Source of the DNA: Ruditapes philippinarum
Lineage: Eukaryota
Assembly (NCBI RefSeq): GCF_026571515.1
Contig: NW_026859677.1
Coordinates: forward strand, 1-64,000
Reading direction: 5' to 3'
DNA: 64,000 nucleotides
Part shown: piece after piece, positions 1,103 through 43,094 of the stretch
Numbering within the stretch: the first letter of the stretch is position 1
Layout of the letters: every line of letters starts with the position of its first letter
Notes under the pieces: generated by a model
Databases searched by the model: none
What the model saw: the letters and a program-made list of their open reading frames with translations, nothing else
What the model was told of the DNA's origin: nothing
Position numbers and translations under genes: made by a program

Positions 1103-4100
1103 GTAAGTGCTGATCAACATATCTACATATTGTTTTTTAAATCTTATTTTTTAAGGTTGCATATTATTAACACACCTACGTTGTTATGAATGTTTTTTTC
1201 TTCTTTATTTTTGGCTTGCAGCCACGGCTGCAAGCCATCTGTTTTGTTTTGGAAAAGTTGTTCCGGTAAGGTGGTTTCCTGCTTACATTTGTTCGTGCAT
1301 GATTGAACGGGAAACCAGCGGCAATCGTGCCAATCGCAACTTTTCGGCCCTTTCCGTCACTCTTTGGATTAATGATAATAGCCGATGTAGTTCCGATTGC
1401 AATCGTGACAATTCGGGCGATTCCGTCATACTGCGGAATCAGATGAAGTAATATCACGGAAATCTAAGCTATTTTAGTAACTTCGGTAATCCCAGTTTGT
1501 TTATATAAATAGGATTTCTATTTTTACTTGATTTATCGGTTTAAACCGTAATAAATTATAAACGAAATTGTTCCGTTTTAATTCTTTTTAAGACGCAAAA
1601 GTTAGTTTCTTTTATAATTGTTTTTGTCTGTATTAGTTTTATATAATAGAGAATGGTTACTGTATTAGTATTCCGTCTCCAAAGGGTGGTCCTGCTTACC
1701 AAATCACACAGAATATTAGTGCATGATCGAGTTATAATTAGATCTACTGAACGCAATTCAACGTCTTGGTGAGGTTATCTAAAAATACTCCATGCATATC
1801 ATTAACCTTACCACGTGCTGATATACAGATAGCGCATCGTATCTGTGATCGTGTAACATAGTTGATACATGCTTATTAATTGATACCACGTAACGAAGTA
1901 TTTTAGTGCATTTACTTGTCTATAAAGCTGCTATATAAATGAAATTAGCAACTGCCAAAACGAATGTTTTCTCTGCGAAAAAAGTGGAAATGAAATGTGC
2001 ACACTTTTTTCCCTTCAGTATGATAGATAGATCTCCACGTTAGTATTTTTACGATTGATTATTTTCTTTATTAGTTTTATACAATATAGAATAGATTTCA
2101 AATCGTTTTGACAAAAAATATTCGTTTTTTTTTTCACAAAAAAAAACAACTAAATAAACCCTTTATGATATACAAATACCGTAATTCAAAAACATTGTTA
2201 TAATAAATTGAAACAAAAAAATTTTTTTAAAGGGTTGGGATAAAGGCACAACTGAGCAAGCCTTTCCTTTTAAAAGGAAACTTTAATTTTTTTTTGGTTC
2301 ATTCTGTTTGCATAGTTAAATCGCATTTTTTACATAAATTTTCGTTTTTTTTTTATTAAATCAATATGTAGGTTTAACGATCTTAAACATTTGTATCAAT
2401 TTTACTCACAAAATTTATGAAATAAGTATTGAGATAGCAAATCAAATTACTCTAAAAGTAAAATTTGAATTTTATTTATAGATTTGCCCTCTAATATCAC
2501 CAAGTACCGCGCGTCAAATCAATTCTTATATTTACCGCGTAAAATAATTAACAATGAACTACGGTGTTCCGTTGGGGCCATTGCCTATAGATAAAGTATG
2601 CATTTAATTAAGAAGTCTTCAGTACCTGCAGAATTTATATTCATTGCATAAGGCTAGAAGTATATGCTCAACAGTTTACTAACGATTGATCTAAAATATC
2701 TCAATACACTAAATTATCATACGTGCTTGGCTTTTTCCTATGAATTATCATGCTTTCTTTGCTTTCTTCTCAAAATAATCATACTTTCTAAAACATCATA
2801 ATTGTGTCCTCTAGAATATCATATTTTCTTTGTTTTCAGAAAATCTCATGATTCCGTGGTTTTATGTTTATGATTATCATTCTTGCATTGAAAAATGCTT
2901 TAGTTAAACATTCTTTTTTTTTTTTCATTCATCTCATAAATTATTAAAACTTCAGATCGATATCTTCTCAATTATCAAACTTTTATCCTAATGATTATCA
3001 TACTTGCATTAATTAATGCTTTAGTTAATCATACTTTCTTTATTGATTACACAAATCATTAAAATTGCATATCATTATCTTCTTCTTTTAATTATCTTAC
3101 ATTTATTCATTTATCCTTTGGTCAATCATACTTTCTTTGGTTCTTTTTTCACCTAAAATATTGTAACATCATGCTTAAATCTTCTTAATTATCATACTTG
3201 CATGGCTTTATCGTATGGATTATCATACTTGCATTGATTTATCCTTTAGTTAATCATACTTTTTGTGTTTATCTTTCAAATTATCATGATAATTCCATGG
3301 TCGTACCCTATAAATTTCAATATTTGCATGTCTTTTTCATATTGATTAGTATTCTTGCGCTGCTTAAAAATATTAATTATGAAACTTGCATAACTTGTAT
3401 CCTCTCTCTGAATTATCATTTTTGACTGTCACATAAATAATTATAAATGAATGGCTGAATCCTATCAATTGATTTATCAATAAATAACGTGTGCAAGGCT
3501 TAATCCTATGATTTATCATACTTGCATGGCAGAGCCACGTTACCACTGTAAACAGTTACCCTCGAGCTAGATATTCCGGTCTGTACCGGCAGCCGGTGTA
3601 GGATCCTTATATTGCCATGGTATTAACCTATGGATTATCTTGCTTTAATGACATAGTCCTTTATGGATTATACGTGCACATCGGCTCGGGTTATATAAAC
3701 ATGCAAGCAACCGTTTATATAGAACCATATAATCTGTCAAAAAATCTTTAAAGCTAATAATATATTATTATTTAGTAGGGTTATGATACTTTTTGAAAGG
3801 GGCCATATCAAATATTCGGTGCGAAACGTTTGAATCACAGGTAAACGTTGCGTGGCCATGACTTACACTATACCCCCGTTTCCCCTCTACAACCCAAAAC
3901 CTTAAAAAAAAAATTATGAAAAAAAAGATTTTTTTATGACTTAAATATTATAAAGGTATTTTACTCTACTTTCATTTTGCATAGAAATATCACTAGCATC
4001 TCAATTATCAGCGCATATATTCATCAATTTTTCACCAATCTTAACAATCTTGGTCTCAAATCTTAGATAAATAAATACTCTTTAAGAAAACAACAATGGC

Positions 4101-7100
4101 ACCTTCGCTGATTATACGTAGCAAGAAATATCCAAGCCCAAACTGTCAACAAATGAAACTCGGAAGAGATCTGATTGCACCGTTTCGGTAAAACTCTCAC
4201 GAGTAAAACACACTAAATTCACCGTGAAAGAATATTTCTTTGTATTGCGTATTTAAATATGATAAAATTAAAGGAATAAGAATGGATGGATTGATGTCTG
4301 TCTAATATAAATATTCATCATTTAAAAAGAGGAACCATGACAGTTTCCCTATTGACATCAACCCTATAAGAGAGAAATTCGTGTTTAAAGACACTATTTT
4401 TTACTTGAGAAATAAGTTCATGGGCGCCGCCATTTTGGCGTTCTGTCATTCTCGCGAGACAGACGAGACCGAGATTGTGACGTGTTATACCCACTTCCGG
4501 TATAGTTGTACACGCTGGTACAACTGAAATATATCTTGATGAAGAACTTATTAATTTAATTGCGTACATTATATATTATTTATGAAAACATCATATGGAA
4601 CTGAATTGCTTTAATTAATTAATTGAAGACGCCGCGACATTAATTATCATTTGCCCGATATTCAAGCTTGCTGATGATCCCACCACATGATTTAAGCAAT
4701 GATTATTGGGAACTGAAAAAAAATGTGTTGCTATTTTATGACGTGCTGTAATTTACTACAGTACAATTTGACAGGTGTGGAACCAAATTCCCCCTAAGGT
4801 CATTCAGTTCACTGATGAAGCGTAAAAAAATAGATGTCTATTTCGTCATTAGAATATTTGACAAGGGTGATTAACCAATTAGGGCAACATTGTGCATGAT
4901 CAAAAGGTCTGTCGGCACAGAGGCATACAAGGAGCAATAAAAATCGTCAGTACACAGTGTGACAGGAGCATTTGGTGCAAATTAGGAACAATTAAAATGG
5001 ACAATGCGCAGTATTAGACATAAGTAGTAAGAACCAGCAATTGTGTGAATAAATTATGCAAATTAGATTTTTGAGCAGCCAATAAAAATGATTTGCCTGC
5101 AGTTAATATTAGGCTACGATTACGATGCGCAGCATCATACGTTGACAGACATGTTAACAATTTACTTTTCAAAACAGTTGCTTATATTTTTGAAATGTGT
5201 ACATCAATTATAACATATGTTCACACCTTTAAATTTGAAAGTCAGAATCAAACTGCAAAAAATTAATTATATGTACTATTAAGAACACGTTTTATTAGGT
5301 TTTTTATAATGGAAGTGGCTAGCGTGCGGGCCCGTACGGCTAGCCAAAGTTTTAGCCGTACGTGAGTCACGTACGACTAGCAAGGACACGCTGTATTGGC
5401 TAGCCGTACGGCACTTTTCAAAATTTTTATGGAAGTCGAAAATGCATATTTATTTTATGACTTTAAGCGAGGATTTTATCCAAGAAACAGCATTAATTGT
5501 CTTTGGATGTTAACTTTTTAGAGATTAATCGCCTTGATCGCTATATATATCGATCTTTGTCATCGCAAGATGTCGAGAAAAAATAGCCTTTGCTTGCATT
5601 TACACCAATTGAAATAGTTTACAAATTTTTGATAATAATCCTTTTTTGTTTCATTAAGTTTAATTTTCGACACCTTTTATATGAAAAAAAAAACAAAAAA
5701 ACAACAAACACTGAAAATGATTGTTGTTAGGCTCTTGATAATTTCGACAATTACCGACGGTACTGTATCAAGGAAAGTTTGCATGTTCCGTGAAAGGCAT
5801 TCTAAAATTGTCAGTCCCTGGATAGGTTTTAATTAAGGCTAATTAATTGATTGACTGTGCTTTTATGTTCGATATTTATCTACTGTTTTGAAAATTATAT
5901 AATTATTTTTGCATTTCACCGTTTTTTCCATTCAATGTTCTTTTTATTTATTTATTTATTCCACTCCGATCATTTTTTATTCGATCCATGTGCTCTAAAT
6001 TAACAAAAATGATTTAATTATTCATACAAATTAAACAACAAATGATAAGCATGAAAATCAACAATTTTATAACGTTCGACTTCCATATAATTTTGAAAAT
6101 TGCCGTACGGCTAGACAATACGGTGCGTCCTGGCTAGTCGTTCGTGACTCACGTACGGCTAGAACTTTTGGCTAGCCGTACGTTTCTTTATTTATTATTA
6201 TTTTTTTTTTTGATATTGTTACGTATTTTGAACCATAAAAAATCTCCTCTACACCTCCTGTGAAAATTAAATTGTCTGATCAATACTTTATTATATTAAT
6301 ATTTCCTTACGATTCAACTAGATTTATCATGAATCTAAAAGATGTGGGGAAATGACATCACGCGCACCTGTTTTTATACGGCCAATACACAAACATGGCC
6401 GCGCTTACCGATTTGTAGAAATCGGTGATTTAGCGATTTAAATTTTGTTATCATTCGTTTGATATTATTATTTGGCGGCAGAAAATTTGCAGACTTATTA
6501 TTTATAGTATTCTTTTTCTGAAATCAAGTTTTTATTTTAACCTTGGCTTTCCCTTTAAGTTATTATTTATAATAATTGTTCAATCAAAGCATCTTATGAA
6601 ACTATAACGCACCTTTTTTCCTATATGTCAAATTCTAATTCCAAAATGAAAGTAAAATGGGCCTGCAGATTGTTTTCAAATGGAGTATTTTCATTGGTCA
6701 CAGGAAAACCTCGGACCAATGAAAATACTTAAAGGGAAACAACTCTGCTGTGCCAATTTACTTTCATTTTGGATTGAGAATTTGACATATAGGAACAAAG
6801 GTGCGTTTAGTGTAAGTCATGGCCACGCAACGTTTACCTGTGGTTTGAATATTACTCCCTTGACATAAAAAAGAACATATAAAGTTTTGTTTATTCGATA
6901 ATATATGTCGATTTGATTTGACATAAATCTATTGGGTAATGCAACTTGGTAGTTACATAATCCGAAGGTTTAAAGTGAAATTGTTTGATAGAATTATTGT
7001 ATTAATATATATACATGCGCCCTTTAAAGAATTAAAGAACTTGAGCAATTTCCGGCGCATGATTTGCACATAGTTGTGGCTTTTACAATCGTCAACTTAT

Positions 7101-36100: not shown

Positions 36101-38234
36101 GAGCTGTTATTAATTATCTATTTCATAAATAAATTCCCGTTACAAGTTGCAATGATATTAACTTTTTTCAAATATCAAGCTTCTAAAGAACGTACAATTT
36201 ATATATACATTTTATAAACATCTTCTGCTTTGCTTTTCTTTCACAAATAGATATTATCAAAGTATTTCTGTCCAGCGCATGTGGCCCTTTTAATATAAAT
36301 AAATTAGAATTGCATTAACTAGGCTCTAAAATGAATTGACAAATCAAATGAATCAAATGTTTCCATCTTTTATAAGATGTTAAGCAAAAGATTGAACAAA
36401 ATAATTTAAATACCCGCTATCACCGAGAAGGAACCCATCTGAAAAACTTTTGTTATCTTTCTCAAGACGCTGACAAAGCCCCGATGTTCTGAAAACATGA
36501 CTATCATGGCAAGAACCTGGCCAACTTGCATTTACACTCGTGAATTTACCTGTAGTAGAACATACTTGATTAATACATAGTGAAAAATTACAATGTTGAT
36601 AATATTTGTGAGTCATTATTATGTTAGGTAGACAACCTGATTTTGGACTTTTGGAGTAGTCTTGAGGTGTCATATGGACTCTTGGGGTAGTTTAAGACAC
36701 ACCGTGTAGTGTCTCCTTACACAGGAATGAAAGAATTTTAACAGTTATGTTATGATTTCATCTGATTTTTTATGACTTTATGTTTCCTTCACGAAGTTGA
36801 AAAAAAACCTTTTTTTTTAATCTTAGAACTTTAAAGATTGAAGAATTCCTTTATGCGTATTTAGCCAATATTAATAATTAGTTGTAAGTAAGATAACAAA
36901 GGGGAATTTTTGAATTTTTAAATTTAATTATCCAAAATAAAAGTTGACTGTTTGCACTAAGTATAAAGATATCACGGAAAGTGATACCATTTTGTCTTTA
37001 AACCGATTTACCCAAAGTTGTTTTTTTATTTATTGTTGTAAGCAGCTTTGACCTAAATCGTGATACACAAACGATTTGAACAAAAGTGAAAATATACCTT
37101 CATTATCACAGACAGCTTGTACAGAAATACTATGATAGCCTTTTCTGTTTACGAAGGAGGAGGCCTCATCGGTCCTTTGGTGCCTGGATCCTAACATGTG
37201 TGCCGTCAATGCAGCCGATTACATTCGTAAATCGGGCGACATCGAAAAAGTGTGAAGAAATTTTCTTTTTTTTGTCGTTATGTGGCCAGTGCACAAACTC
37301 ATGGATGTGACTTATTAGTGCATCTGTGAAACTGTTAACCGCTCTTGACGGTCTCACCCCGGTACGGAATTAAACCCAGCCCAGAAAATAGTTCTTTGAA
37401 ATTTTTAAGTGTCCTATTTTAAGTCATTTTTGATGTGACTGGTTACATTTTAGTGTATTTATTGTAACAGTGTACATTTAATGTCATTTCTGATGACTTT
37501 AAAAGTTGTTTTTTTTGTGTATTCTGCAGGATCTCATTTCTTGGTGGAAGGATTCGATAAGAACTACACGCTAGCATACATGACATTTGAAACTTTGATA
37601 ATTTGACAGTGACTTAACAAATCAAGATATATTGTGAAATCTAGATGGCTAATATAGGACATTTCGGGCTTCGACTAACTTTTCTAGTGTTGATGTTTAA
37701 AGTTATGAAATACAGAATTCTTATGAGTTTAAAAGAAGTCCAGAATGAAGCTTTAAATGTGACAGATTTACTATGGAATAAAGAAGGACGAAAATTGAGT
37801 GGGCCGTGTCCAATATAAAATATGGTAAAATTGGATTCCATGAAAACTACCGATAATAATTGCATGAAAATTAGCATGCTTGTAGACTTGGTACATTAAA
37901 GTCAGCAACAAAGAGGATTATTGTCAGGTATGTGAATTTTTTATTTTATTAAAAAAATAATTTTGACATATTGAAATATGCCCAAAATGGCCTGGAGTTG
38001 TCTTCCCTTGATAAATAGTCGTCTTCAATTGTTTAGATCATCAGAAAAAAATAAAGAAACAATACCGGGCTATATCTACATGATCTATAAAATACAAATA
38101 TCATTTTGTTGAAATTAAGCTATTATTTTTTTTTTTAAATATATAAATTAAATTTAAATTTTATTTCAGAATTGACCTGTTTTATTACTTTAAATTGCTT
38201 TATTCCCTAGGGCTAAGTTTGATAATAAATAGGT

Positions 38235-38633
38235 ATGGATGAGGTAAAAGAAGTGTGCCGAAAGAAATTGAGCAGCAAAAGTGTCATACATGCAAATGGA
38301 GAATGTGTTTTTTGGACAGGATTTGTGAAGCTGCAAAGCTATGGACAGATTCGCTACAGAGATCCAAGAAACGTAGAGAGCCGTAGACATAGGACCTGAA
38401 CAAGTCATCGTATTGCTCTAATGGTTTATTTCAGGGACTTTGATATTCAAGCAAGTCAACAAGCATTTCATTAATGCAACAATAAATTATGTATCAATAT
38501 TCATCATCTCGTACTTGAGGCGTGCGGTATAAATAATTTAAGAAAAAAATGTTTTTCTCATTGTAGGTGCTATGGTCATTTTGATGCAGATTGAAATCTA
38601 TTATCACATTGCCTAGTGCATTCATCATCATAG
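38235..38633 (+). pseudogene. His-Me finger / His-Cys box (I-PpoI-like) endonuclease pseudogene
   Basis: MDEVKEVCRKKL...GECVFWTG...YGQIRY...T*TSHRIALMV...AFH*CNNKLCINIHHLVLEACGINNLRKKCF..CRCYGHF..*..LSHC; 133 codons in one frame with 3 internal stops. Confidence 0.85.
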
Positions 38634-38929
38634 TGTTATTACAGGGGACTTGTTAATTTGAAGCATTTTTTATATCTTTTTCAGATAATTGACCTGCTGT
38701 TAGGGACCATGTGGATAACTTTTTCTGTTCTATTTCTCGCTGCTTAGTATACATGTTGTTGTTTTTTTTTAATTTAATTTTTTGTAACATTTGAGCTTTC
38801 CCGTTTCGACCGGCAAATCAGGTCATTATCTGACATTCTGGCATGAATGTGACGGGGCCCATCCTTGCTTTTATTTCACTTGGATTTGCACCGTCAAGGC
38901 AGCGCTTCAGAGAAACGCTACAATGTTGA

Positions 38930-40165
38930 AGGCCCTGCCTCGACAAGCTGTCCCTTTTTGTATTCTTCAGTATTCGGACCTGTACTTCTAGCAAGATAGT
39001 ACATGTGCTCCAATTTGGATCGCCTTTGTCTTCTCTTTTTCTTAAATTGCAGTGTTCTTTGGTAGATTTTATGCCTTTGTAGCCTTTTTGAAGCTGATTT
39101 CAGATATCTGCCAGCTCTTGGTGACAGAGTATGACCCGCTAGGCTGCTGACCTTTTCTGAACAGAATCCTGCAGTGAATTATTTATCTGCAGTGTTTTTG
39201 AGGCAAGACTGCCGGCAAAGTTTCTTGTCAAGTTTATTTCTTAAGGCAAGGTTGATAACACTGCTCTATTGAATCCTTCAAATGTCTGTGTGGAGAAATT
39301 ATTTGTTACACTTTGGACAGCGTATTCACTCAGACGTATCCATAGAAAAGCCAACAAAAGATTATGAATACCATGTGTTGGTAGATAGGAAGAGTTATAC
39401 CACCAGTCCACAACTTCCCCTATGCCAGAGCAAACTAGCGAGTCATCGGGACAGAAGTTACAGTTTCCAGCGTAACACTCCAATGTGGCTCTACGGTATT
39501 AAGATTTCCTTTGACACCATTTTCTTTTAATCGCAGCTTTTTAATAATGGCGCCGCATCTAGCTAAATTCTTTGCGAAAAATACAGTAGCTTGCTGTTTT
39601 GCTTTGCTAGATAGTCTCTTTCCTTGAAACAATGTTGTGATCCAATTTGAAGCTCGGGCCCTTCTAATTTGGCGACTGCCTAGATGATGAGGGGCTGCTT
39701 GACGGGCAACCTTCCATGCGCTTCCTAGTTTGTTGTAGAAGTTAGACATTCCAAGGTGGGCTTTTTCATCGCCATCTGTTGTCAGGGTTCGAACCAATAT
39801 GCTTTCCTTTGTCATATGCCATTTGCCTTTCAGAATGACGCTGCATGTATGGCATCTCTGCTGTACAATCAAAATGGCCAGGGCAACTGACTTCGAATCT
39901 TGGTTTCGCATATATGCACCAGTCCAGCAAAGCGTATTGTGCACTGTTAGTCCAACTACATAGTTAAAGCTGGTTATGATTTTCAATGGCAACACCATAA
40001 GCCTACGAAGCAGCCTGCCCAGGCTTGTATGATGAAACCATTCTGGTAGCATTGTAACGGCTATCAAAGGACAAGTCAAGATGGTTTGGATGGGGTCTTG
40101 ATTTTTCTTGTTATCTTGGCTAACAAGTTTCCTTTTCTCCTCCATATCTTCATTGTTGAGCTTTT
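38930..40165 (-). pseudogene. Kolobok-type DDE transposase (5'-truncated, frameshifted)
   Basis: Motifs LSFDSRY (D), RTLTTDGD (D), STQTFEGFNR (E); ORF fragments 39435-40145 and 39241-39483. Confidence 0.78.
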
Positions 40166-43094
40166 ATTTTAATAGAAGTCCAGAATGAAGCTTTTAATGT
40201 GACAGATTTAATATAGAATAAAGAAGGACGAAATTGTCTGAGCCGTGTCCTGACACAGTACTTTTACTAAATCCGCAGGTATCCCCAATGACTTCATACA
40301 TGGAATCAGATGCAAACAACTTAATGCTAACAAAACTTGATTTCTTGGTGAAATGGCATGGTTTCTCTTAGTACTTCTTAGTAATTAGTTCATTTTCTAG
40401 TAAATTTACAATATGATTAACACCTTCATTACTAAATCTGTACCTGCGTATCATTTCACTGTCAGTCATTTCACGTAGATGCGAGATATAACTCTTCTTA
40501 TAGAAACTAATATAAAAGTAGCCATCTTTTATTCCTCTGTTAAATTTTTAACGGAGGTTCAAACCTCGATTAAATTGACAGACAGATTCAGCTGTTTAAG
40601 TGGCAGTTAAAGTGAACTTTAATTTTGAGCAACAGAATTTAACACAAAGGTTAACTTTAACCGTCTGTTAATGCATTTATTACAAAAAATAAAATAGAAA
40701 AATAATTCTGATTTTTGTTATAATAAAACTAAAAATCAGATTTGTTTCTATTTTTCTTTTTTAATATATGCATATTATATTTAAATAACATATTTTAGGT
40801 CTATCATCTTTGATACTATGCGTAACTAGGCAGAAAATATTCAATAATACCGCGGGCCTCATCTATAGACTTTTCTATAAATATTGCGAAAACTTTAAAA
40901 AAGTGTGTGTGGGGGGGGTCTTTTTATTATTAAGGAAGTTTAACATATATCCTAAATATTTTATCAATTATTAGTCATTATCAATATAATAGTCAAATCT
41001 CTTTAAAAAAAAACTATAACCAAATTCAAGTCAAACTAAAAAAGAAAAAATAGTATGATGTCACTTTAATAACTAGTTTTACCAAAAAAAAAGGAAAAAA
41101 GAGATCCCGTTGTAGTGTATAAAGGCGCTATGATAGGGTTACATAATCATATAAAGCAGAATGGAATACAGCATTATAGAATTTATCAAAACTTTGCATG
41201 ATCTTAGAATAATATTGTGATAACAGAAGCATTTTAAGCAATAAAATTCTGGTGCACCGACCTCGTTTCGAGTTATCTTTCCTCTTGCTTTTGAAGGTTC
41301 GATAATGATTATAAACAATCAAGGGTATCAATTGCTTATGTTATCAGCATATCTGACTTCTTTCTGAGTATTCCTGTAAAATTTCCAGAAAATGTAACAA
41401 GTAGTTTGTGTATTTGTTTTCGTTATTGAAAGATATGCAATTAAAAATGGCCTATTCTTAAAGATTTTGCGATTCTCCGTACATAAAATGAATAAAAGAA
41501 ACAGAAGTGTATTAGAATTCTATCAAATTTTGTATTCTAGACTTAACAAATAATAAAATGGAGAAAAAATAAACATAAACCAATAGTAAAATAATAATAT
41601 AGAATTAATGTTTCAGTAATCACCTAAAACAATCAAAGCACTGAAAGTACTGGAGGGTCGCTTGCGCTGACAAATTTATATGGCATTATATTGCTGGTGA
41701 TCACCTGAAAGGCAAAAGCATGTTCTTTAGCAACTTTTTTGAAAAAGGTCATGTCATATTCAAGTGGAAATGATTGAATACAAAGGAAAGAGCAATATTT
41801 TATTTAATTTAATTCAGGAAGATTTATCATTGGCATCCAACAATTACAACACGGTTTATCAAAAGTACTAAAAACCAGTATTTTTTCTCAAGTGGCTCAG
41901 TTGAGATCGAAAAACCAAACTGCTTTATATCCTCAAAATAATACTTTGAAAGTTGAATAAATTTTAAGAGTACACTACTGACAGAAGCAGAAGCTGGAAG
42001 TAGATAACCAAGTCCTCTATTAACAATGACTTAGCATTGATAATTTCATCTACTTATAAAGCATATGAAAAACATGCTCATTCTTGGGGATTATAGTTAT
42101 TATCAATCTGATATTCAAGTTATCAAGTCCAAACAACTCGATAAGAAAATGGTTGAAAAATCTTTCTGTTTATATGCATACTAGTAATAAGTGTTCCATC
42201 AGGGATAAACTTTCAGTGATTGTGAATACATGACTTATCAATGTCACAATTTCATCCAGAGAGATTCATGAAATTCTCACAAACAATAAGTCAAGTATGG
42301 TCAGTTAAAACTAGAACTATCTCTAAATGTGATTAATACCCCCATAAAACAGCTTTGGACATTAGGATGTAACAGAATACCTTGTAAAAGAATTGAAATA
42401 GAGTTATGTTTGTGGGCATTTAAAGATAGTAAGTTGTGGTTCCTGTATGTTGCATTTCCTTTCAATGTGGTTGACCATTGATGAAGTTTTATTGAATAAC
42501 TCTGTAATAAGTCAAGAAAGACAAGGAAAAGGATCAAAGGGCAATAACTCTATAAATACTGCAGATGGAGTAATGGTAATTGTACACTGCACTTTCTCTC
42601 ATTCGCTTGACCATTGTATGAAGTTGAATTGAATTCCAAATACTAGTTTTCAAGTGATGCACTGGACAAAAGTACCAAAGGGCACTTACTGTAGAGTCAT
42701 TCCTGCAAAGTTTGGTTACTGTGCAGTCTTTGGTTTCTGAGGAGATTTGTTTAAAGAAATTTTTAACGACCCACGACAACTGATGGAGGAGGATCACAAT
42801 AGTTCACCATGAGCACGTTGTGCTCAGGTGAGCTAAAAAATAATGATCAAAATACAAGTTCGTGGATAACCTCGGCAATGCCAACATGACTGTTACCATA
42901 CCTCTATTTTTTAAAAAGAAAAAGTCGAGCTAAACAGGGGCATAACTGCATCAAAAATAATTTATTGTGGCCAAAATTGAACGAAAATCTGTCTTTTGAT
43001 ACTAACATGGCAAATATCAAAACACTTCATTCCTTCATAAGTTGTCCTGCAGAAATCAATTGAACACCATAACTTATAACATGCTTTTCAGTAA

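What the first reader, a model, noticed from the sequence alone, without database searches (positions are those of the whole stretch)
37350..40250. Composite DNA transposon carrying a homing-endonuclease-type nuclease plus a DDE transposase between long direct repeats (KolobokP-like)
Seen: the Harbinger transposase is cut exactly between ...FSKSTVS and RAVNSF..., with a TGAC duplication. The 2.9-kb insert has a 462-bp left segment (37350-37811) whose 3' end (...gccgtgtcc) recurs at the right terminus. It also holds a + strand His-Cys box nuclease reading frame (38235-38633, missed by the ORF track because of 3 stops) and a convergent D-D-E transposase. Known: KolobokP elements have this architecture (long direct repeats, transposase and His-Me finger nuclease), unusual for eukaryotic DNA transposons, and canonical Kolobok TSDs are TTAA. 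Inference: a KolobokP-like family member with a non-TTAA target, whose right repeat and transposase 5' end were removed by one deletion at ~40165.
Basis: partly seen in the sequence, partly recalled or inferred. Interest (0 to 1): 0.8.

Follow-up and report, generated by a model that had tools for sequence, protein, structure and literature searches.

The report
Decayed KolobokP transposon copy in a mollusc

Summary
A 2,901-bp insert (37350-40250) splits a Harbinger/PIF-type transposase frame. Five of nine paralogous Harbinger copies carry one TGAC where the window has TGAC on both sides of the insert.

Full copies of the same family elsewhere in this genome are 4.66 kb. They have:
- 471-bp direct repeats at both ends
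- an intact 132-aa I-PpoI-like His-Me nuclease
- a convergent, intact 624-aa DDE transposase

The window copy lost 1,677 bp in what looks like one deletion: the transposase 5' third and the first 387 bp of one repeat. Its nuclease frame has 3 stops, and its transposase has several frameshifts.

Nearly every feature that Kojima and Bao (2022, PMC9587614) use to define KolobokP is met:
- repeats of about 450 bp with GG...CC termini
- 3-4 bp duplications with no fixed target sequence
- solo repeats and a dimer
- a CCHC finger and a second zinc finger in the transposase

The repeats' own inverted ends are weak in this family (8 of 14).

A non-TTAA target is normal for KolobokP. At least four further KolobokP families are in this genome. 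Earlier scan notes list other Kolobok lineages here but not KolobokP.

The parts
37346..37349 (.). Left copy of the 4-bp target site duplication (TGAC)
   Evidence: The empty sites in 5 of 9 paralogous Harbinger copies hold one TGAC.
37350..37811 (+). Complete long terminal direct repeat (LTDR), 462 bp. It starts GGTCTCACC and ends CCGTGTCC. In the paper's orientation (transposase on the direct strand) it is the downstream LTDR.
   Evidence: It is 92-93% identical to both 471-bp end repeats of the full copies L031 and L032. One search reported 939 first-look candidates for the whole insert; 40 were scored, and most of the listed matches are to this unit.
37812..40162 (.). Remnant of the internal region (INT), colinear with positions 472-2903 of the 4,193-bp LTDR+INT reference taken from the full copy
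38235..38633 (+). Pseudogene of the His-Me finger (His-Cys box, I-PpoI-like) nuclease. It has 3 in-frame stops and no frameshift. The conserved Ser before the catalytic His is replaced, and a stop follows the His.
   Evidence: The intact paralog has PF05551 at 34.2 bits. Profile against PDB: I-PpoI at E 6e-5. VIA-align: Z 6.2 over 112 residues.
38918..40162 (-). Remnant of the Kolobok-type DDE transposase (coding nt 569-1875 of 1875; residues about 190-624) with several frameshifts and stops. The N-terminal 189 residues are deleted.
   Evidence: (PF20700, 28.8 bits)
40163..40167 (.). 5-bp filler at the junction of the 1,677-bp deletion (INT 2904-4193 plus LTDR 1-387 in reference coordinates)
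40168..40250 (+). Last 83 bp of the second LTDR (positions 388-471 of the repeat), ending the element
40251..40254 (.). Right copy of the target site duplication (TGAC)
36380..37349 (-). Downstream part of the host element: a decayed Harbinger/PIF-type transposase gene (DDE_Tnp_4)
   Evidence: PF13359 at E 3.3e-12 on 36380-36673. The uninterrupted paralog L036 reads through the insertion point and hits PF13359.
40251..40560 (-). Upstream part of the same Harbinger/PIF-type frame (ends ...GFSKSTVS)

Best explanation
The insert is one old, now inactive copy of a KolobokP DNA transposon, a lineage of the Kolobok superfamily.

What a live element of this family looks like (shown in sister copies). 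It is 4.66 kb long and consists of LTDR (471 bp), INT and a second LTDR. INT encodes a 624-aa DDE transposase. Downstream on the other strand it encodes a 132-aa I-PpoI-like His-Me finger nuclease.

How it got here. The whole unit integrated into a Harbinger/PIF transposase gene and duplicated 4 bp (TGAC). The duplication is shown. That the transposase acting on the outer GG...CC ends made it is inferred.

What happened afterwards (shown):
- The copy lost 1,677 bp, apparently in one deletion. This removed the transposase N-terminus and the first 387 bp of the adjacent LTDR.
- The nuclease gene picked up 3 stops.
- The transposase picked up several frameshifts.
- The copy drifted to about 90-91% identity with the intact copies.
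It can no longer move itself.

The nuclease's role is inferred from the published, untested model. In that model it cuts inside an LTDR or at abutted LTDR ends and provokes unequal crossover. That would yield the multimers and solo LTDRs that are also seen in this genome.
For: - Insertion boundaries and TSD were proved against empty paralogous sites in 5 of 9 loci.
- Full copies: C1645 is 4,664 bp, its LTDRs are 469/471 identical, its TSD is TTAA and both ORFs are open. C5304 is 98.5% identical to it, has TSD AAAA and both ORFs open.
- Transposase: PF20700 at E 1.1e-52 over 1-350 of 357 profile positions. Nuclease: PF05551 at 34.2 bits, above the cut-off of 27.
- Nuclease profile against PDB: the five best rows are all I-PpoI, E 6e-5 to 4.5e-3. 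VIA-align puts I-PpoI first, with Z 5.6-6.2 over 111-112 residues.
- The spacing S78-H79, H91, E95, N100 equals I-PpoI S97-H98, H110, E114, N119 as listed in the paper.
- In a 21-sequence transposase alignment the following are invariant or nearly so: D223; C268-C283-H286-C289 (the CCHC finger after the first D); D325/D327; D352xxH355; C430-C435-C438-C445 (a finger between DxxH and E); E505. The paper gives these two fingers as Kolobok and KolobokP signatures, and says a finger between the second and third catalytic residues is absent in MuDR, P and hAT.
- TSDs: 11 of 14 elements examined have a recognisable TSD, 9 of 4 bp and 2 of 3 bp, and TTAA in 2.
- Solo LTDRs with TSDs: six distinct loci. 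One (LTDR-INT)2-LTDR dimer at C1624.
Against: - The LTDR's own terminal inverted repeat is weak in this family: 8 of 14 positions by eye. The local aligner found no terminal match.
- Foldseek E-values for I-PpoI are not significant (0.23 and above). A single-sequence phmmer search against the PDB missed I-PpoI, and the single-sequence fold was poor (pLDDT 42.7).
- Pfam names the transposase family 'Mutator-like', not Kolobok.
- No tree with named Kolobok references could be built.
- 3 of 14 elements had no clear TSD.
Confidence: 0.93

Rival explanations
1. It is a Mutator-superfamily (MULE or Phantom-like) element, as the Pfam family name suggests, that happens to have direct end repeats. It is not a Kolobok.
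For: The only Pfam hit of the transposase is PF20700 'Mutator-like transposase'. All 46 homologues carry it. Kolobok, MuDR, P and hAT share the C/DxxH motif (paper Background).
Against: - A conserved four-Cys finger lies between DxxH and E. The paper says a finger between the second and third catalytic residues is absent in MuDR, P and hAT.
- TSDs are 3-4 bp. From recall, MULEs make about 8-11 bp.
- Termini are GG...CC, as in Kolobok.
- The architecture is exactly that of published KolobokP.
Confidence: 0.04
2. It is two unrelated insertions side by side: a 462-bp non-autonomous element next to a truncated transposon. It is not one composite unit.
For: The repeat also occurs alone with its own TSDs. 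The paper argues that LTDRs can move on their own.
Against: The empty site shows that the whole 2,901 bp sits between one duplicated TGAC. The same LTDR-INT-LTDR order recurs with TSDs around the whole unit at C1645 and C5304.
Confidence: 0.02
3. It is an LTR-retrotransposon-like or tyrosine-recombinase element (DIRS/Ngaro type), because it has long direct end repeats.
For: Direct repeats of about 470 bp, 4-bp TSDs and solo repeats all look LTR-like.
Against: Pfam found only a DDE transposase and a His-Me nuclease in the two long ORFs of the full copy. No other ORF of 135 aa or more exists in it. Repeat ends are GG...CC, not TG...CA.
Confidence: 0.01

Closest known systems
KolobokP lineage of Kolobok DNA transposons (Kojima and Bao, Mobile DNA 2022, PMC9587614)
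   Same: - LTDR-INT-LTDR layout, with LTDRs in the ~450-bp class (462-471 bp here)
- 5'-RR...YY-3' termini
- autonomous length of 4.66 kb (paper: 4,022-4,748 bp in oyster)
- DDE transposase with both zinc fingers
- convergent small His-Cys box nuclease
- 3-4 bp TSDs without a fixed target
- solo LTDRs, multimers and deletion derivatives
- a mollusc host
   Different: The LTDR's own inverted termini are weak in this family (8 of 14). The paper reports 11-18 bp perfect or imperfect TIRs in oyster families. I could not check whether this particular family is among the 228 listed in the paper, because the supplements were closed. The nearest protein in the public collection is 78% identical.
I-PpoI, the His-Cys box homing endonuclease of a Physarum group I intron (PDB 1A73, 1EVW and others)
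   Same: ββα-metal core with the same spacing of S-H, H, E and N. It is the best PDB match by profile (E 6e-5) and by VIA-align (Z 6.2, 112 residues).
   Different: About 20% identity. 132 aa against 163. It is encoded by a transposon, not an intron. Its target site is unknown and its activity is untested.
Canonical Kolobok elements (Kapitonov and Jurka; as summarised in the paper's Background)
   Same: DDE transposase with C/DxxH and a downstream zinc finger, RR...YY ends and a 4-bp duplication.
   Different: Canonical Kolobok has short TIRs and TTAA-specific TSDs. This family has long direct repeats, and only 2 of 11 recognisable TSDs are TTAA.
Bacterial composite transposons / IS26-type pseudo-composites
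   Same: A coding middle part is flanked by two copies of a unit that has its own inverted ends and can occur alone.
   Different: Here the flanking units encode nothing and the transposase sits in the middle. The host is eukaryotic. The comparison is the paper's analogy and was not tested here.

Membership tests
KolobokP | Long terminal direct repeats at both ends, about 450 bp or about 660 bp | tested here: met
   Full copy L031 has 471-bp repeats that are 469/471 identical. The window has one complete 462-bp repeat plus the last 83 bp of the other. Sister families in the same genome have 455, 464 and 650 bp.
KolobokP | Each LTDR has its own short terminal inverted repeat (paper: 11-18 bp, perfect or imperfect) | tested here: inconclusive
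   Family of the window: 8 of 14 terminal positions match, counted by eye on the ends printed. The local aligner found nothing at the termini. Sister families in this genome are clear: 13-14 bp perfect at C9857, 11 of 14 at C11813, and 6-7 bp perfect then imperfect at C6962 and C1067.
KolobokP | [quoted passage not shown] | tested here: met
   L031 has a 624-aa transposase and a 132-aa nuclease in convergent orientation. The same convergent pairing is seen at C5209, C11813, C6962, C9857 and C1067.
KolobokP | CCHC zinc finger downstream of the first catalytic D | tested here: met
   C268, C283 and C289 are invariant and H286 is present in at least 90% of 21 aligned transposases. D223 is invariant upstream of them.
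KolobokP | TSDs of 3-5 bp, no strong target preference | tested here: met
   11 of 14 elements have a recognisable TSD. The 4-bp ones are TGAC, TTAA x2, AAAA, GTTT, ATAT, CTAA, ATAG and GTTA; the 3-bp ones are AGT and AAT. 3 of 14 are unclear.
KolobokP | Solo LTDRs and (LTDR-INT)n-LTDR multimers occur | tested here: met
   Six distinct solo LTDRs with TSDs (L013, L015, L018, L021, L023, L028). One dimer of a deletion derivative at C1624.
KolobokP | Transposase falls inside the KolobokP clade on a tree with Repbase Kolobok families | not testable with these tools
   No named Kolobok reference sequences are available.
Kolobok superfamily | DDE triad with a C/DxxH motif, and a zinc finger between that motif and the last E | tested here: met
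   D223, D325/D327, D352xxH355, C430-C435-C438-C445 and E505 are conserved. The third Cys, C438, is invariant, which fits the paper's remark that the third position is extremely conserved.
Kolobok superfamily | Termini 5'-RR and YY-3' | tested here: met
   GG...CC in the window copy and in every LTDR end printed.
Kolobok superfamily | TTAA-specific 4-bp TSD | tested here: not met
   TTAA in 2 of 11 recognisable TSDs. The paper reports the same relaxation for KolobokP, so this does not count against KolobokP membership.
His-Cys box homing endonucleases (I-PpoI group of His-Me finger nucleases) | ββα-metal motif with the catalytic His and Asn, plus the conserved S, H and E at I-PpoI spacing, and conserved Cys/His zinc ligands | tested here: met
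   S78, H79, H91, E95, N100, C24, C81, C86, C112 and H115 are invariant, and C106 and C126 nearly so, in 17 sequences. PF05551 scores 34.2 bits against a cut-off of 27. I-PpoI is the top PDB hit at E 6e-5. The window's own copy has lost S78 and has a stop after H79.
His-Cys box homing endonucleases (I-PpoI group of His-Me finger nucleases) | Sequence-specific DNA cleavage at a homing site | not testable with these tools
   This needs biochemistry. A 2026 review says the KolobokP model awaits experimental confirmation (passage read).
Harbinger/PIF (host element) | DDE_Tnp_4 transposase domain | tested here: met
   PF13359 at E 3.3e-12 on window 36380-36673 and at E 1.9e-8 on the uninterrupted paralog L036.

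The most novel reading that the evidence does not exclude
The family is still mobile in this mollusc.

- Two copies (C1645, C5304) keep both ORFs open, and the LTDRs of the C1645 copy are 469/471 identical.
- Sister families (C6962, C1067, C9857) have 100% identical LTDRs. The transposase matches at C6962 and C9857 have no internal stops; the C1067 match covers only part of the protein.
- Both LTDR length classes (about 460 bp and 650 bp) occur in one genome.

If so, this genome would be a natural system for testing the unproven idea that a transposon-borne homing-type nuclease drives unequal crossover between the element's own end repeats.
Probability: 0.35. Interest if true: 0.4.

Novelty: new member of a known kind. 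Interest (0 to 1): 0.15.

Why it matters
It matters little beyond annotation. The copy is a dead member of a lineage described in 2022 and reported in almost all bivalve genomes analysed.

Three things are useful:
- The nested insertion gives a clean empty-site proof of a 4-bp, non-TTAA duplication for this family.
- The genome holds intact copies of several KolobokP families.
- Pfam labels the transposase 'Mutator-like', which would mislead automatic annotation.

The open question is what the His-Me nuclease cuts and whether it drives multimer formation. This window does not address it.

Tried and rejected
- Single-sequence phmmer of the nuclease against PDB sequences found only chance LRR hits. 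A 17-sequence profile then found I-PpoI.
- The single-sequence AlphaFold model was poor (pLDDT 42.7). The alignment-based model reached 76.6.
- Foldseek ranked I-PpoI first, but at non-significant E (0.23 and above). VIA-align gave Z 6.2, which is middling by the tool's own note.
- Full-text search for PF20700, to link the Pfam name to Kolobok, found 0 papers.
- Per-position conservation over 26 LTDR copies showed no stand-out block (window means 0.92-1.00). So there is no candidate nuclease site from conservation.
- Local alignment of the LTDR ends found no terminal inverted repeat. The 8-of-14 figure is my own count on the printed ends.
- C5209 (L046) showed only a 114-bp identical direct repeat, and C614 (L050) showed none, only satellite-like arrays. 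I did not resolve the LTDRs of those two copies.
- C5097, which looked like a multimer, is better read as two ~3.0-kb non-autonomous copies about 3.9 kb apart. This reading comes from coordinates only.
- The organism's name could not be had: runs are coded. Earlier scan notes call it a mollusc or clam (unchecked).
- LTR-retroelement and tyrosine-recombinase readings were rejected for lack of any such domain.


Full report
**What is in the window**

The sequence at 37350-40250 is a 2,901-bp block, 36.7% G+C against 33.6% for the window. It interrupts a minus-strand reading frame. The frame ends ...GFSKSTVS at 40251 and resumes RAVNSF... at 37349. TGAC is present on both sides, at 37346-37349 and 40251-40254.

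I tested the boundaries against empty sites. A search of the window's own genome (G000, 1.41 Gb in 15,874 contigs) with the 400 bp left of the insert found 10 candidates besides the window itself, and all were scored. I examined 9 of these paralogous loci.
- In 5 of them, matches to the left and right flanks overlap by exactly 4 bp. The junction reads ...cgctcttgac|ac(a/t)gtactttt..., with a single TGAC.
- The other 4 are truncated or diverged at the junction.

One uninterrupted paralog (L036) has a 181-aa ORF that reads straight through the insertion point (...GFSKSTVSRAVDSV...) and hits Pfam DDE_Tnp_4. The window's downstream piece 36380-36673 hits it too (E 3.3e-12). So the host is a decayed Harbinger/PIF-type transposase gene. 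The insert is one event with a 4-bp target duplication.

**What the insert is**

A search of G000 with the insert gave 939 first-look candidates, of which 40 were scored, so copy numbers are lower bounds. Three loci match over query 1-2813 and then continue.

I took out the fuller stretches. The copy on C1645 is 4,664 bp:
- It has 471-bp direct repeats at both ends, with 469 of 471 positions identical.
- It is flanked by TTAA on both sides.
- It carries a 132-aa ORF on the strand of the repeats and a 624-aa ORF on the other strand. The two ORFs converge.

The copy on C5304 is 98.5% identical. It has both ORFs open, has AAAA on both sides, and has an unrelated insertion inside one repeat. The copy on C6380 is 89.5% identical and full of stops.

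**How the window copy differs from a full copy**

- It is colinear with positions 1-2903 of the LTDR+INT reference. It then jumps to repeat positions 388-471, with 5 filler bases at 40163-40167.
- The missing 1,677 bp are the last 1,290 bp of the internal region, which hold the transposase 5' part, and the first 387 bp of the adjacent repeat.
- The remaining transposase (38918-40162, minus strand) covers coding nt 569-1875. It carries 8 internal indels, 6 of them not multiples of 3, and is 93.5% identical over aligned positions.
- The nuclease frame (38235-38630) is 82% identical in protein to the intact one. It has 2 TGA and 1 TAA and no frameshift.
- The complete repeat and the 83-bp remnant match at 71 of the 78/77 positions compared. 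This is consistent with an old insertion.

**The proteins**

*Transposase.* The intact transposase matches only Pfam PF20700, 'Mutator-like transposase': E 1.1e-52, profile positions 1-350 of 357. The window's 242-aa piece scores 28.8 bits against a cut-off of 26.5.

*Nuclease.*
- The intact nuclease matches PF05551 (zf-His_Me_endon) at 34.2 bits, above the cut-off of 27.
- Sixteen homologues (48-67% identical, all carrying PF05551) were found in the public collection.
- In the 17-row alignment, S78-H79, H91, E95 and N100 are invariant. Their spacing equals that of I-PpoI S97-H98, H110, E114 and N119 as the paper lists them.
- A profile of this alignment finds I-PpoI as the five best PDB rows, E 6e-5 to 4.5e-3.
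- An AlphaFold model built on the alignment has mean pLDDT 76.6.
- Foldseek ranks four I-PpoI chains and I-HmuI first, but its E-values (0.23-0.81) are not significant.
- VIA-align gives I-PpoI Z 5.6-6.2 over 111-112 residues, then SMAD MH1 domains at about 5 and I-HmuI at 4.0. By the tool's own note these Z values are middling, so I lean on the sequence evidence.

**Comparison with what is known**

A full-text search for 'KolobokP' found 2 papers. I read the abstract, the Results, part 1 of the Discussion and passages of the Background of Kojima and Bao 2022 (Mobile DNA 13:24, PMC9587614). They describe the following features:
- LTDR-INT-LTDR elements, with LTDRs of about 450 or about 660 bp
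- 5'-RR...YY-3' termini and short TIRs within each LTDR
- autonomous lengths of 4,022-4,748 bp in oyster
- a DDD/E transposase, with a His-Cys box nuclease downstream on the complementary strand
- TSDs of 3-4 or 4-5 bp, with no strong target preference
- solo LTDRs, multimers and deletion derivatives
- presence in almost all bivalve genomes analysed

They also give two transposase signatures. [quoted passage not shown] The other is a CCHC finger after the first D, present in KolobokP and a few other lineages.

In my alignment of 21 transposases (21-66% identity to the query), the following are invariant or at least 90% conserved: D223, C268/C283/H286/C289, D325/D327, D352xxH355, C430/C435/C438/C445 and E505.

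*Target duplications.* Of 14 elements whose ends I inspected, 11 have a recognisable TSD and 3 (C6380, C926, C3519) have none that I could see.
- Nine are 4 bp: TGAC, TTAA twice, AAAA, GTTT, ATAT, CTAA, ATAG, GTTA.
- Two are 3 bp: AGT and AAT.

*Other forms of the family.*
- Six distinct solo LTDRs carry TSDs.
- C1624 holds an (LTDR-INT)2-LTDR dimer of a deletion derivative lacking reference positions 1268-3280.
- C926 holds the monomer of that derivative.
- A ~3.0-kb non-autonomous family shares the LTDR and the first ~25 bp of INT.

The one feature that is weak here is the LTDR's own inverted termini. I count 8 of 14 matching positions on the printed ends, and the local aligner found nothing at the termini.

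**More KolobokP families in the same genome**

Protein searches of G000 show further transposase/nuclease pairs in convergent order, at 23-78% transposase identity. From the stretches I took out:

| Contig | Element length | LTDR length | LTDR identity | LTDR inverted ends | TSD |
|---|---|---|---|---|---|
| C11813 | 4,804 bp | 455 bp | 92% | 11 of 14 | ATAA |
| C6962 | about 4,650 bp | 464 bp | 100% | GGTCAG...CTGACC | TTTA |
| C1067 | about 4,650 bp | 464 bp | 100% | GGTCAG...CTGACC | TTTA |
| C9857 | 5,243 bp | 650 bp | 100% | 13-14 bp perfect | TGA |

Both published LTDR length classes therefore occur in this one genome.

**How it works: shown and inferred**

Shown:
- integration of the whole LTDR-INT-LTDR unit with a 4-bp duplication
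- later decay of this copy
- existence of solo repeats, a dimer and deletion derivatives

Inferred from family knowledge:
- The DDE transposase acts on the outer GG...CC ends.
- The nuclease, being I-PpoI-like, makes a sequence-specific double-strand cut.

The published model has that cut falling in an LTDR or at abutted LTDR ends and inducing unequal crossover. A 2026 review, of which I read the passage only, states that the model awaits experimental confirmation. My scan of conservation along 26 LTDR copies showed no stand-out block that could mark a site.

**What I could not do**

- The look-up of sequencing runs showed that 20 of the 24 listed runs, from 9 studies, hold the full copy or a part of it. 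The runs carry a coded species name, two small-share RNA runs are labelled 'mollusc metagenome', and one DNA run is labelled marine sediment.
- No named Kolobok reference sequences were available, so the tree test is open.
- The paper's supplements (Table S1, Data S1-S5) were closed. They may list this very family.
- The nearest transposase in the public protein collection is 78% identical and unnamed.

**Earlier scan notes**

They record the nuclease stops on this window (s1-808225). They also record other Kolobok lineages (KolobokE, KolX, a DEDDh-type) elsewhere in this genome, which they call a mollusc or clam. None concerns KolobokP.

**Verdict**

The object is a dead, 5'-deleted copy (in the element's own orientation) of a family that belongs to a published lineage. 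A non-TTAA target is normal for that lineage. Interest is low.

Noticed in passing
G000 C11813 (L047 2009-6812), C6962 (L048 2511-7158), C1067 (L051 1123-5772), C9857 (L049 1732-6974): These are four further KolobokP copies from at least three other families. Their LTDRs are 455, 464, 464 and 650 bp, and three of the four have 100% identical LTDRs. Transposase matches at C11813, C6962 and C9857 have no internal stops; the C1067 match covers only residues 73-448. Both published LTDR length classes occur in one genome.
   Followed up: partly
G000 C1624:18403-23154 (L045, reverse strand 2347-7098): (LTDR-INT)2-LTDR dimer of a non-autonomous derivative lacking reference positions 1268-3280, flanked by AGT. 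The monomer of the same derivative is at C926:1636-4286.
   Followed up: yes
G000 C3068:32226-35233, C12848:84309-87310, C11323:62634-65648, C5097 (two copies), C13004:362670: A non-autonomous family of about 3.0 kb shares the LTDR and only the first ~25 bp of INT with the window's family. The rest of its INT is unrelated. On C5097 two copies lie about 3.9 kb apart, which looks like a local duplication rather than a multimer.
   Followed up: partly
G000 C1385:103565-105602 (L006 1501-4038): An LTDR plus an internally deleted INT that runs to the INT end, with no second LTDR in the 295 bp that follow. It resembles the LTDR-INT forms that the paper attributes to excision of a single LTDR.
   Followed up: no
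L049 and L048/L051, LTDR-INT junctions: INT begins and ends with matching tetranucleotides next to the LTDRs: TTAA...TTAA at C9857, and TAAA...TTTA at C6962 and C1067. The paper notes TATA...TATA in one clam family. This may be a trace of how the composite arose.
   Followed up: no
window 36380-37349 and 40251-40560; G000 loci L035-L043: The host Harbinger/PIF-type element is itself a small repeat family: 10 candidates besides the window, at 73-90% identity. At least one paralog has a 181-aa open frame through the insertion point.
   Followed up: partly
G000 C614:18000-26500 (L050) and C5209:1-7500 (L046): The copy with a 78%-identical transposase (C614) sits between satellite-like arrays and shows no detectable LTDR. 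The C5209 copy shows only a 114-bp identical direct repeat. Their ends were not resolved.
   Followed up: no
Pfam PF20700: Pfam calls this transposase family 'Mutator-like', and all 46 homologues found carry it. By the published signatures these proteins are Kolobok, so automatic annotation of such genes will be misleading.
   Followed up: partly
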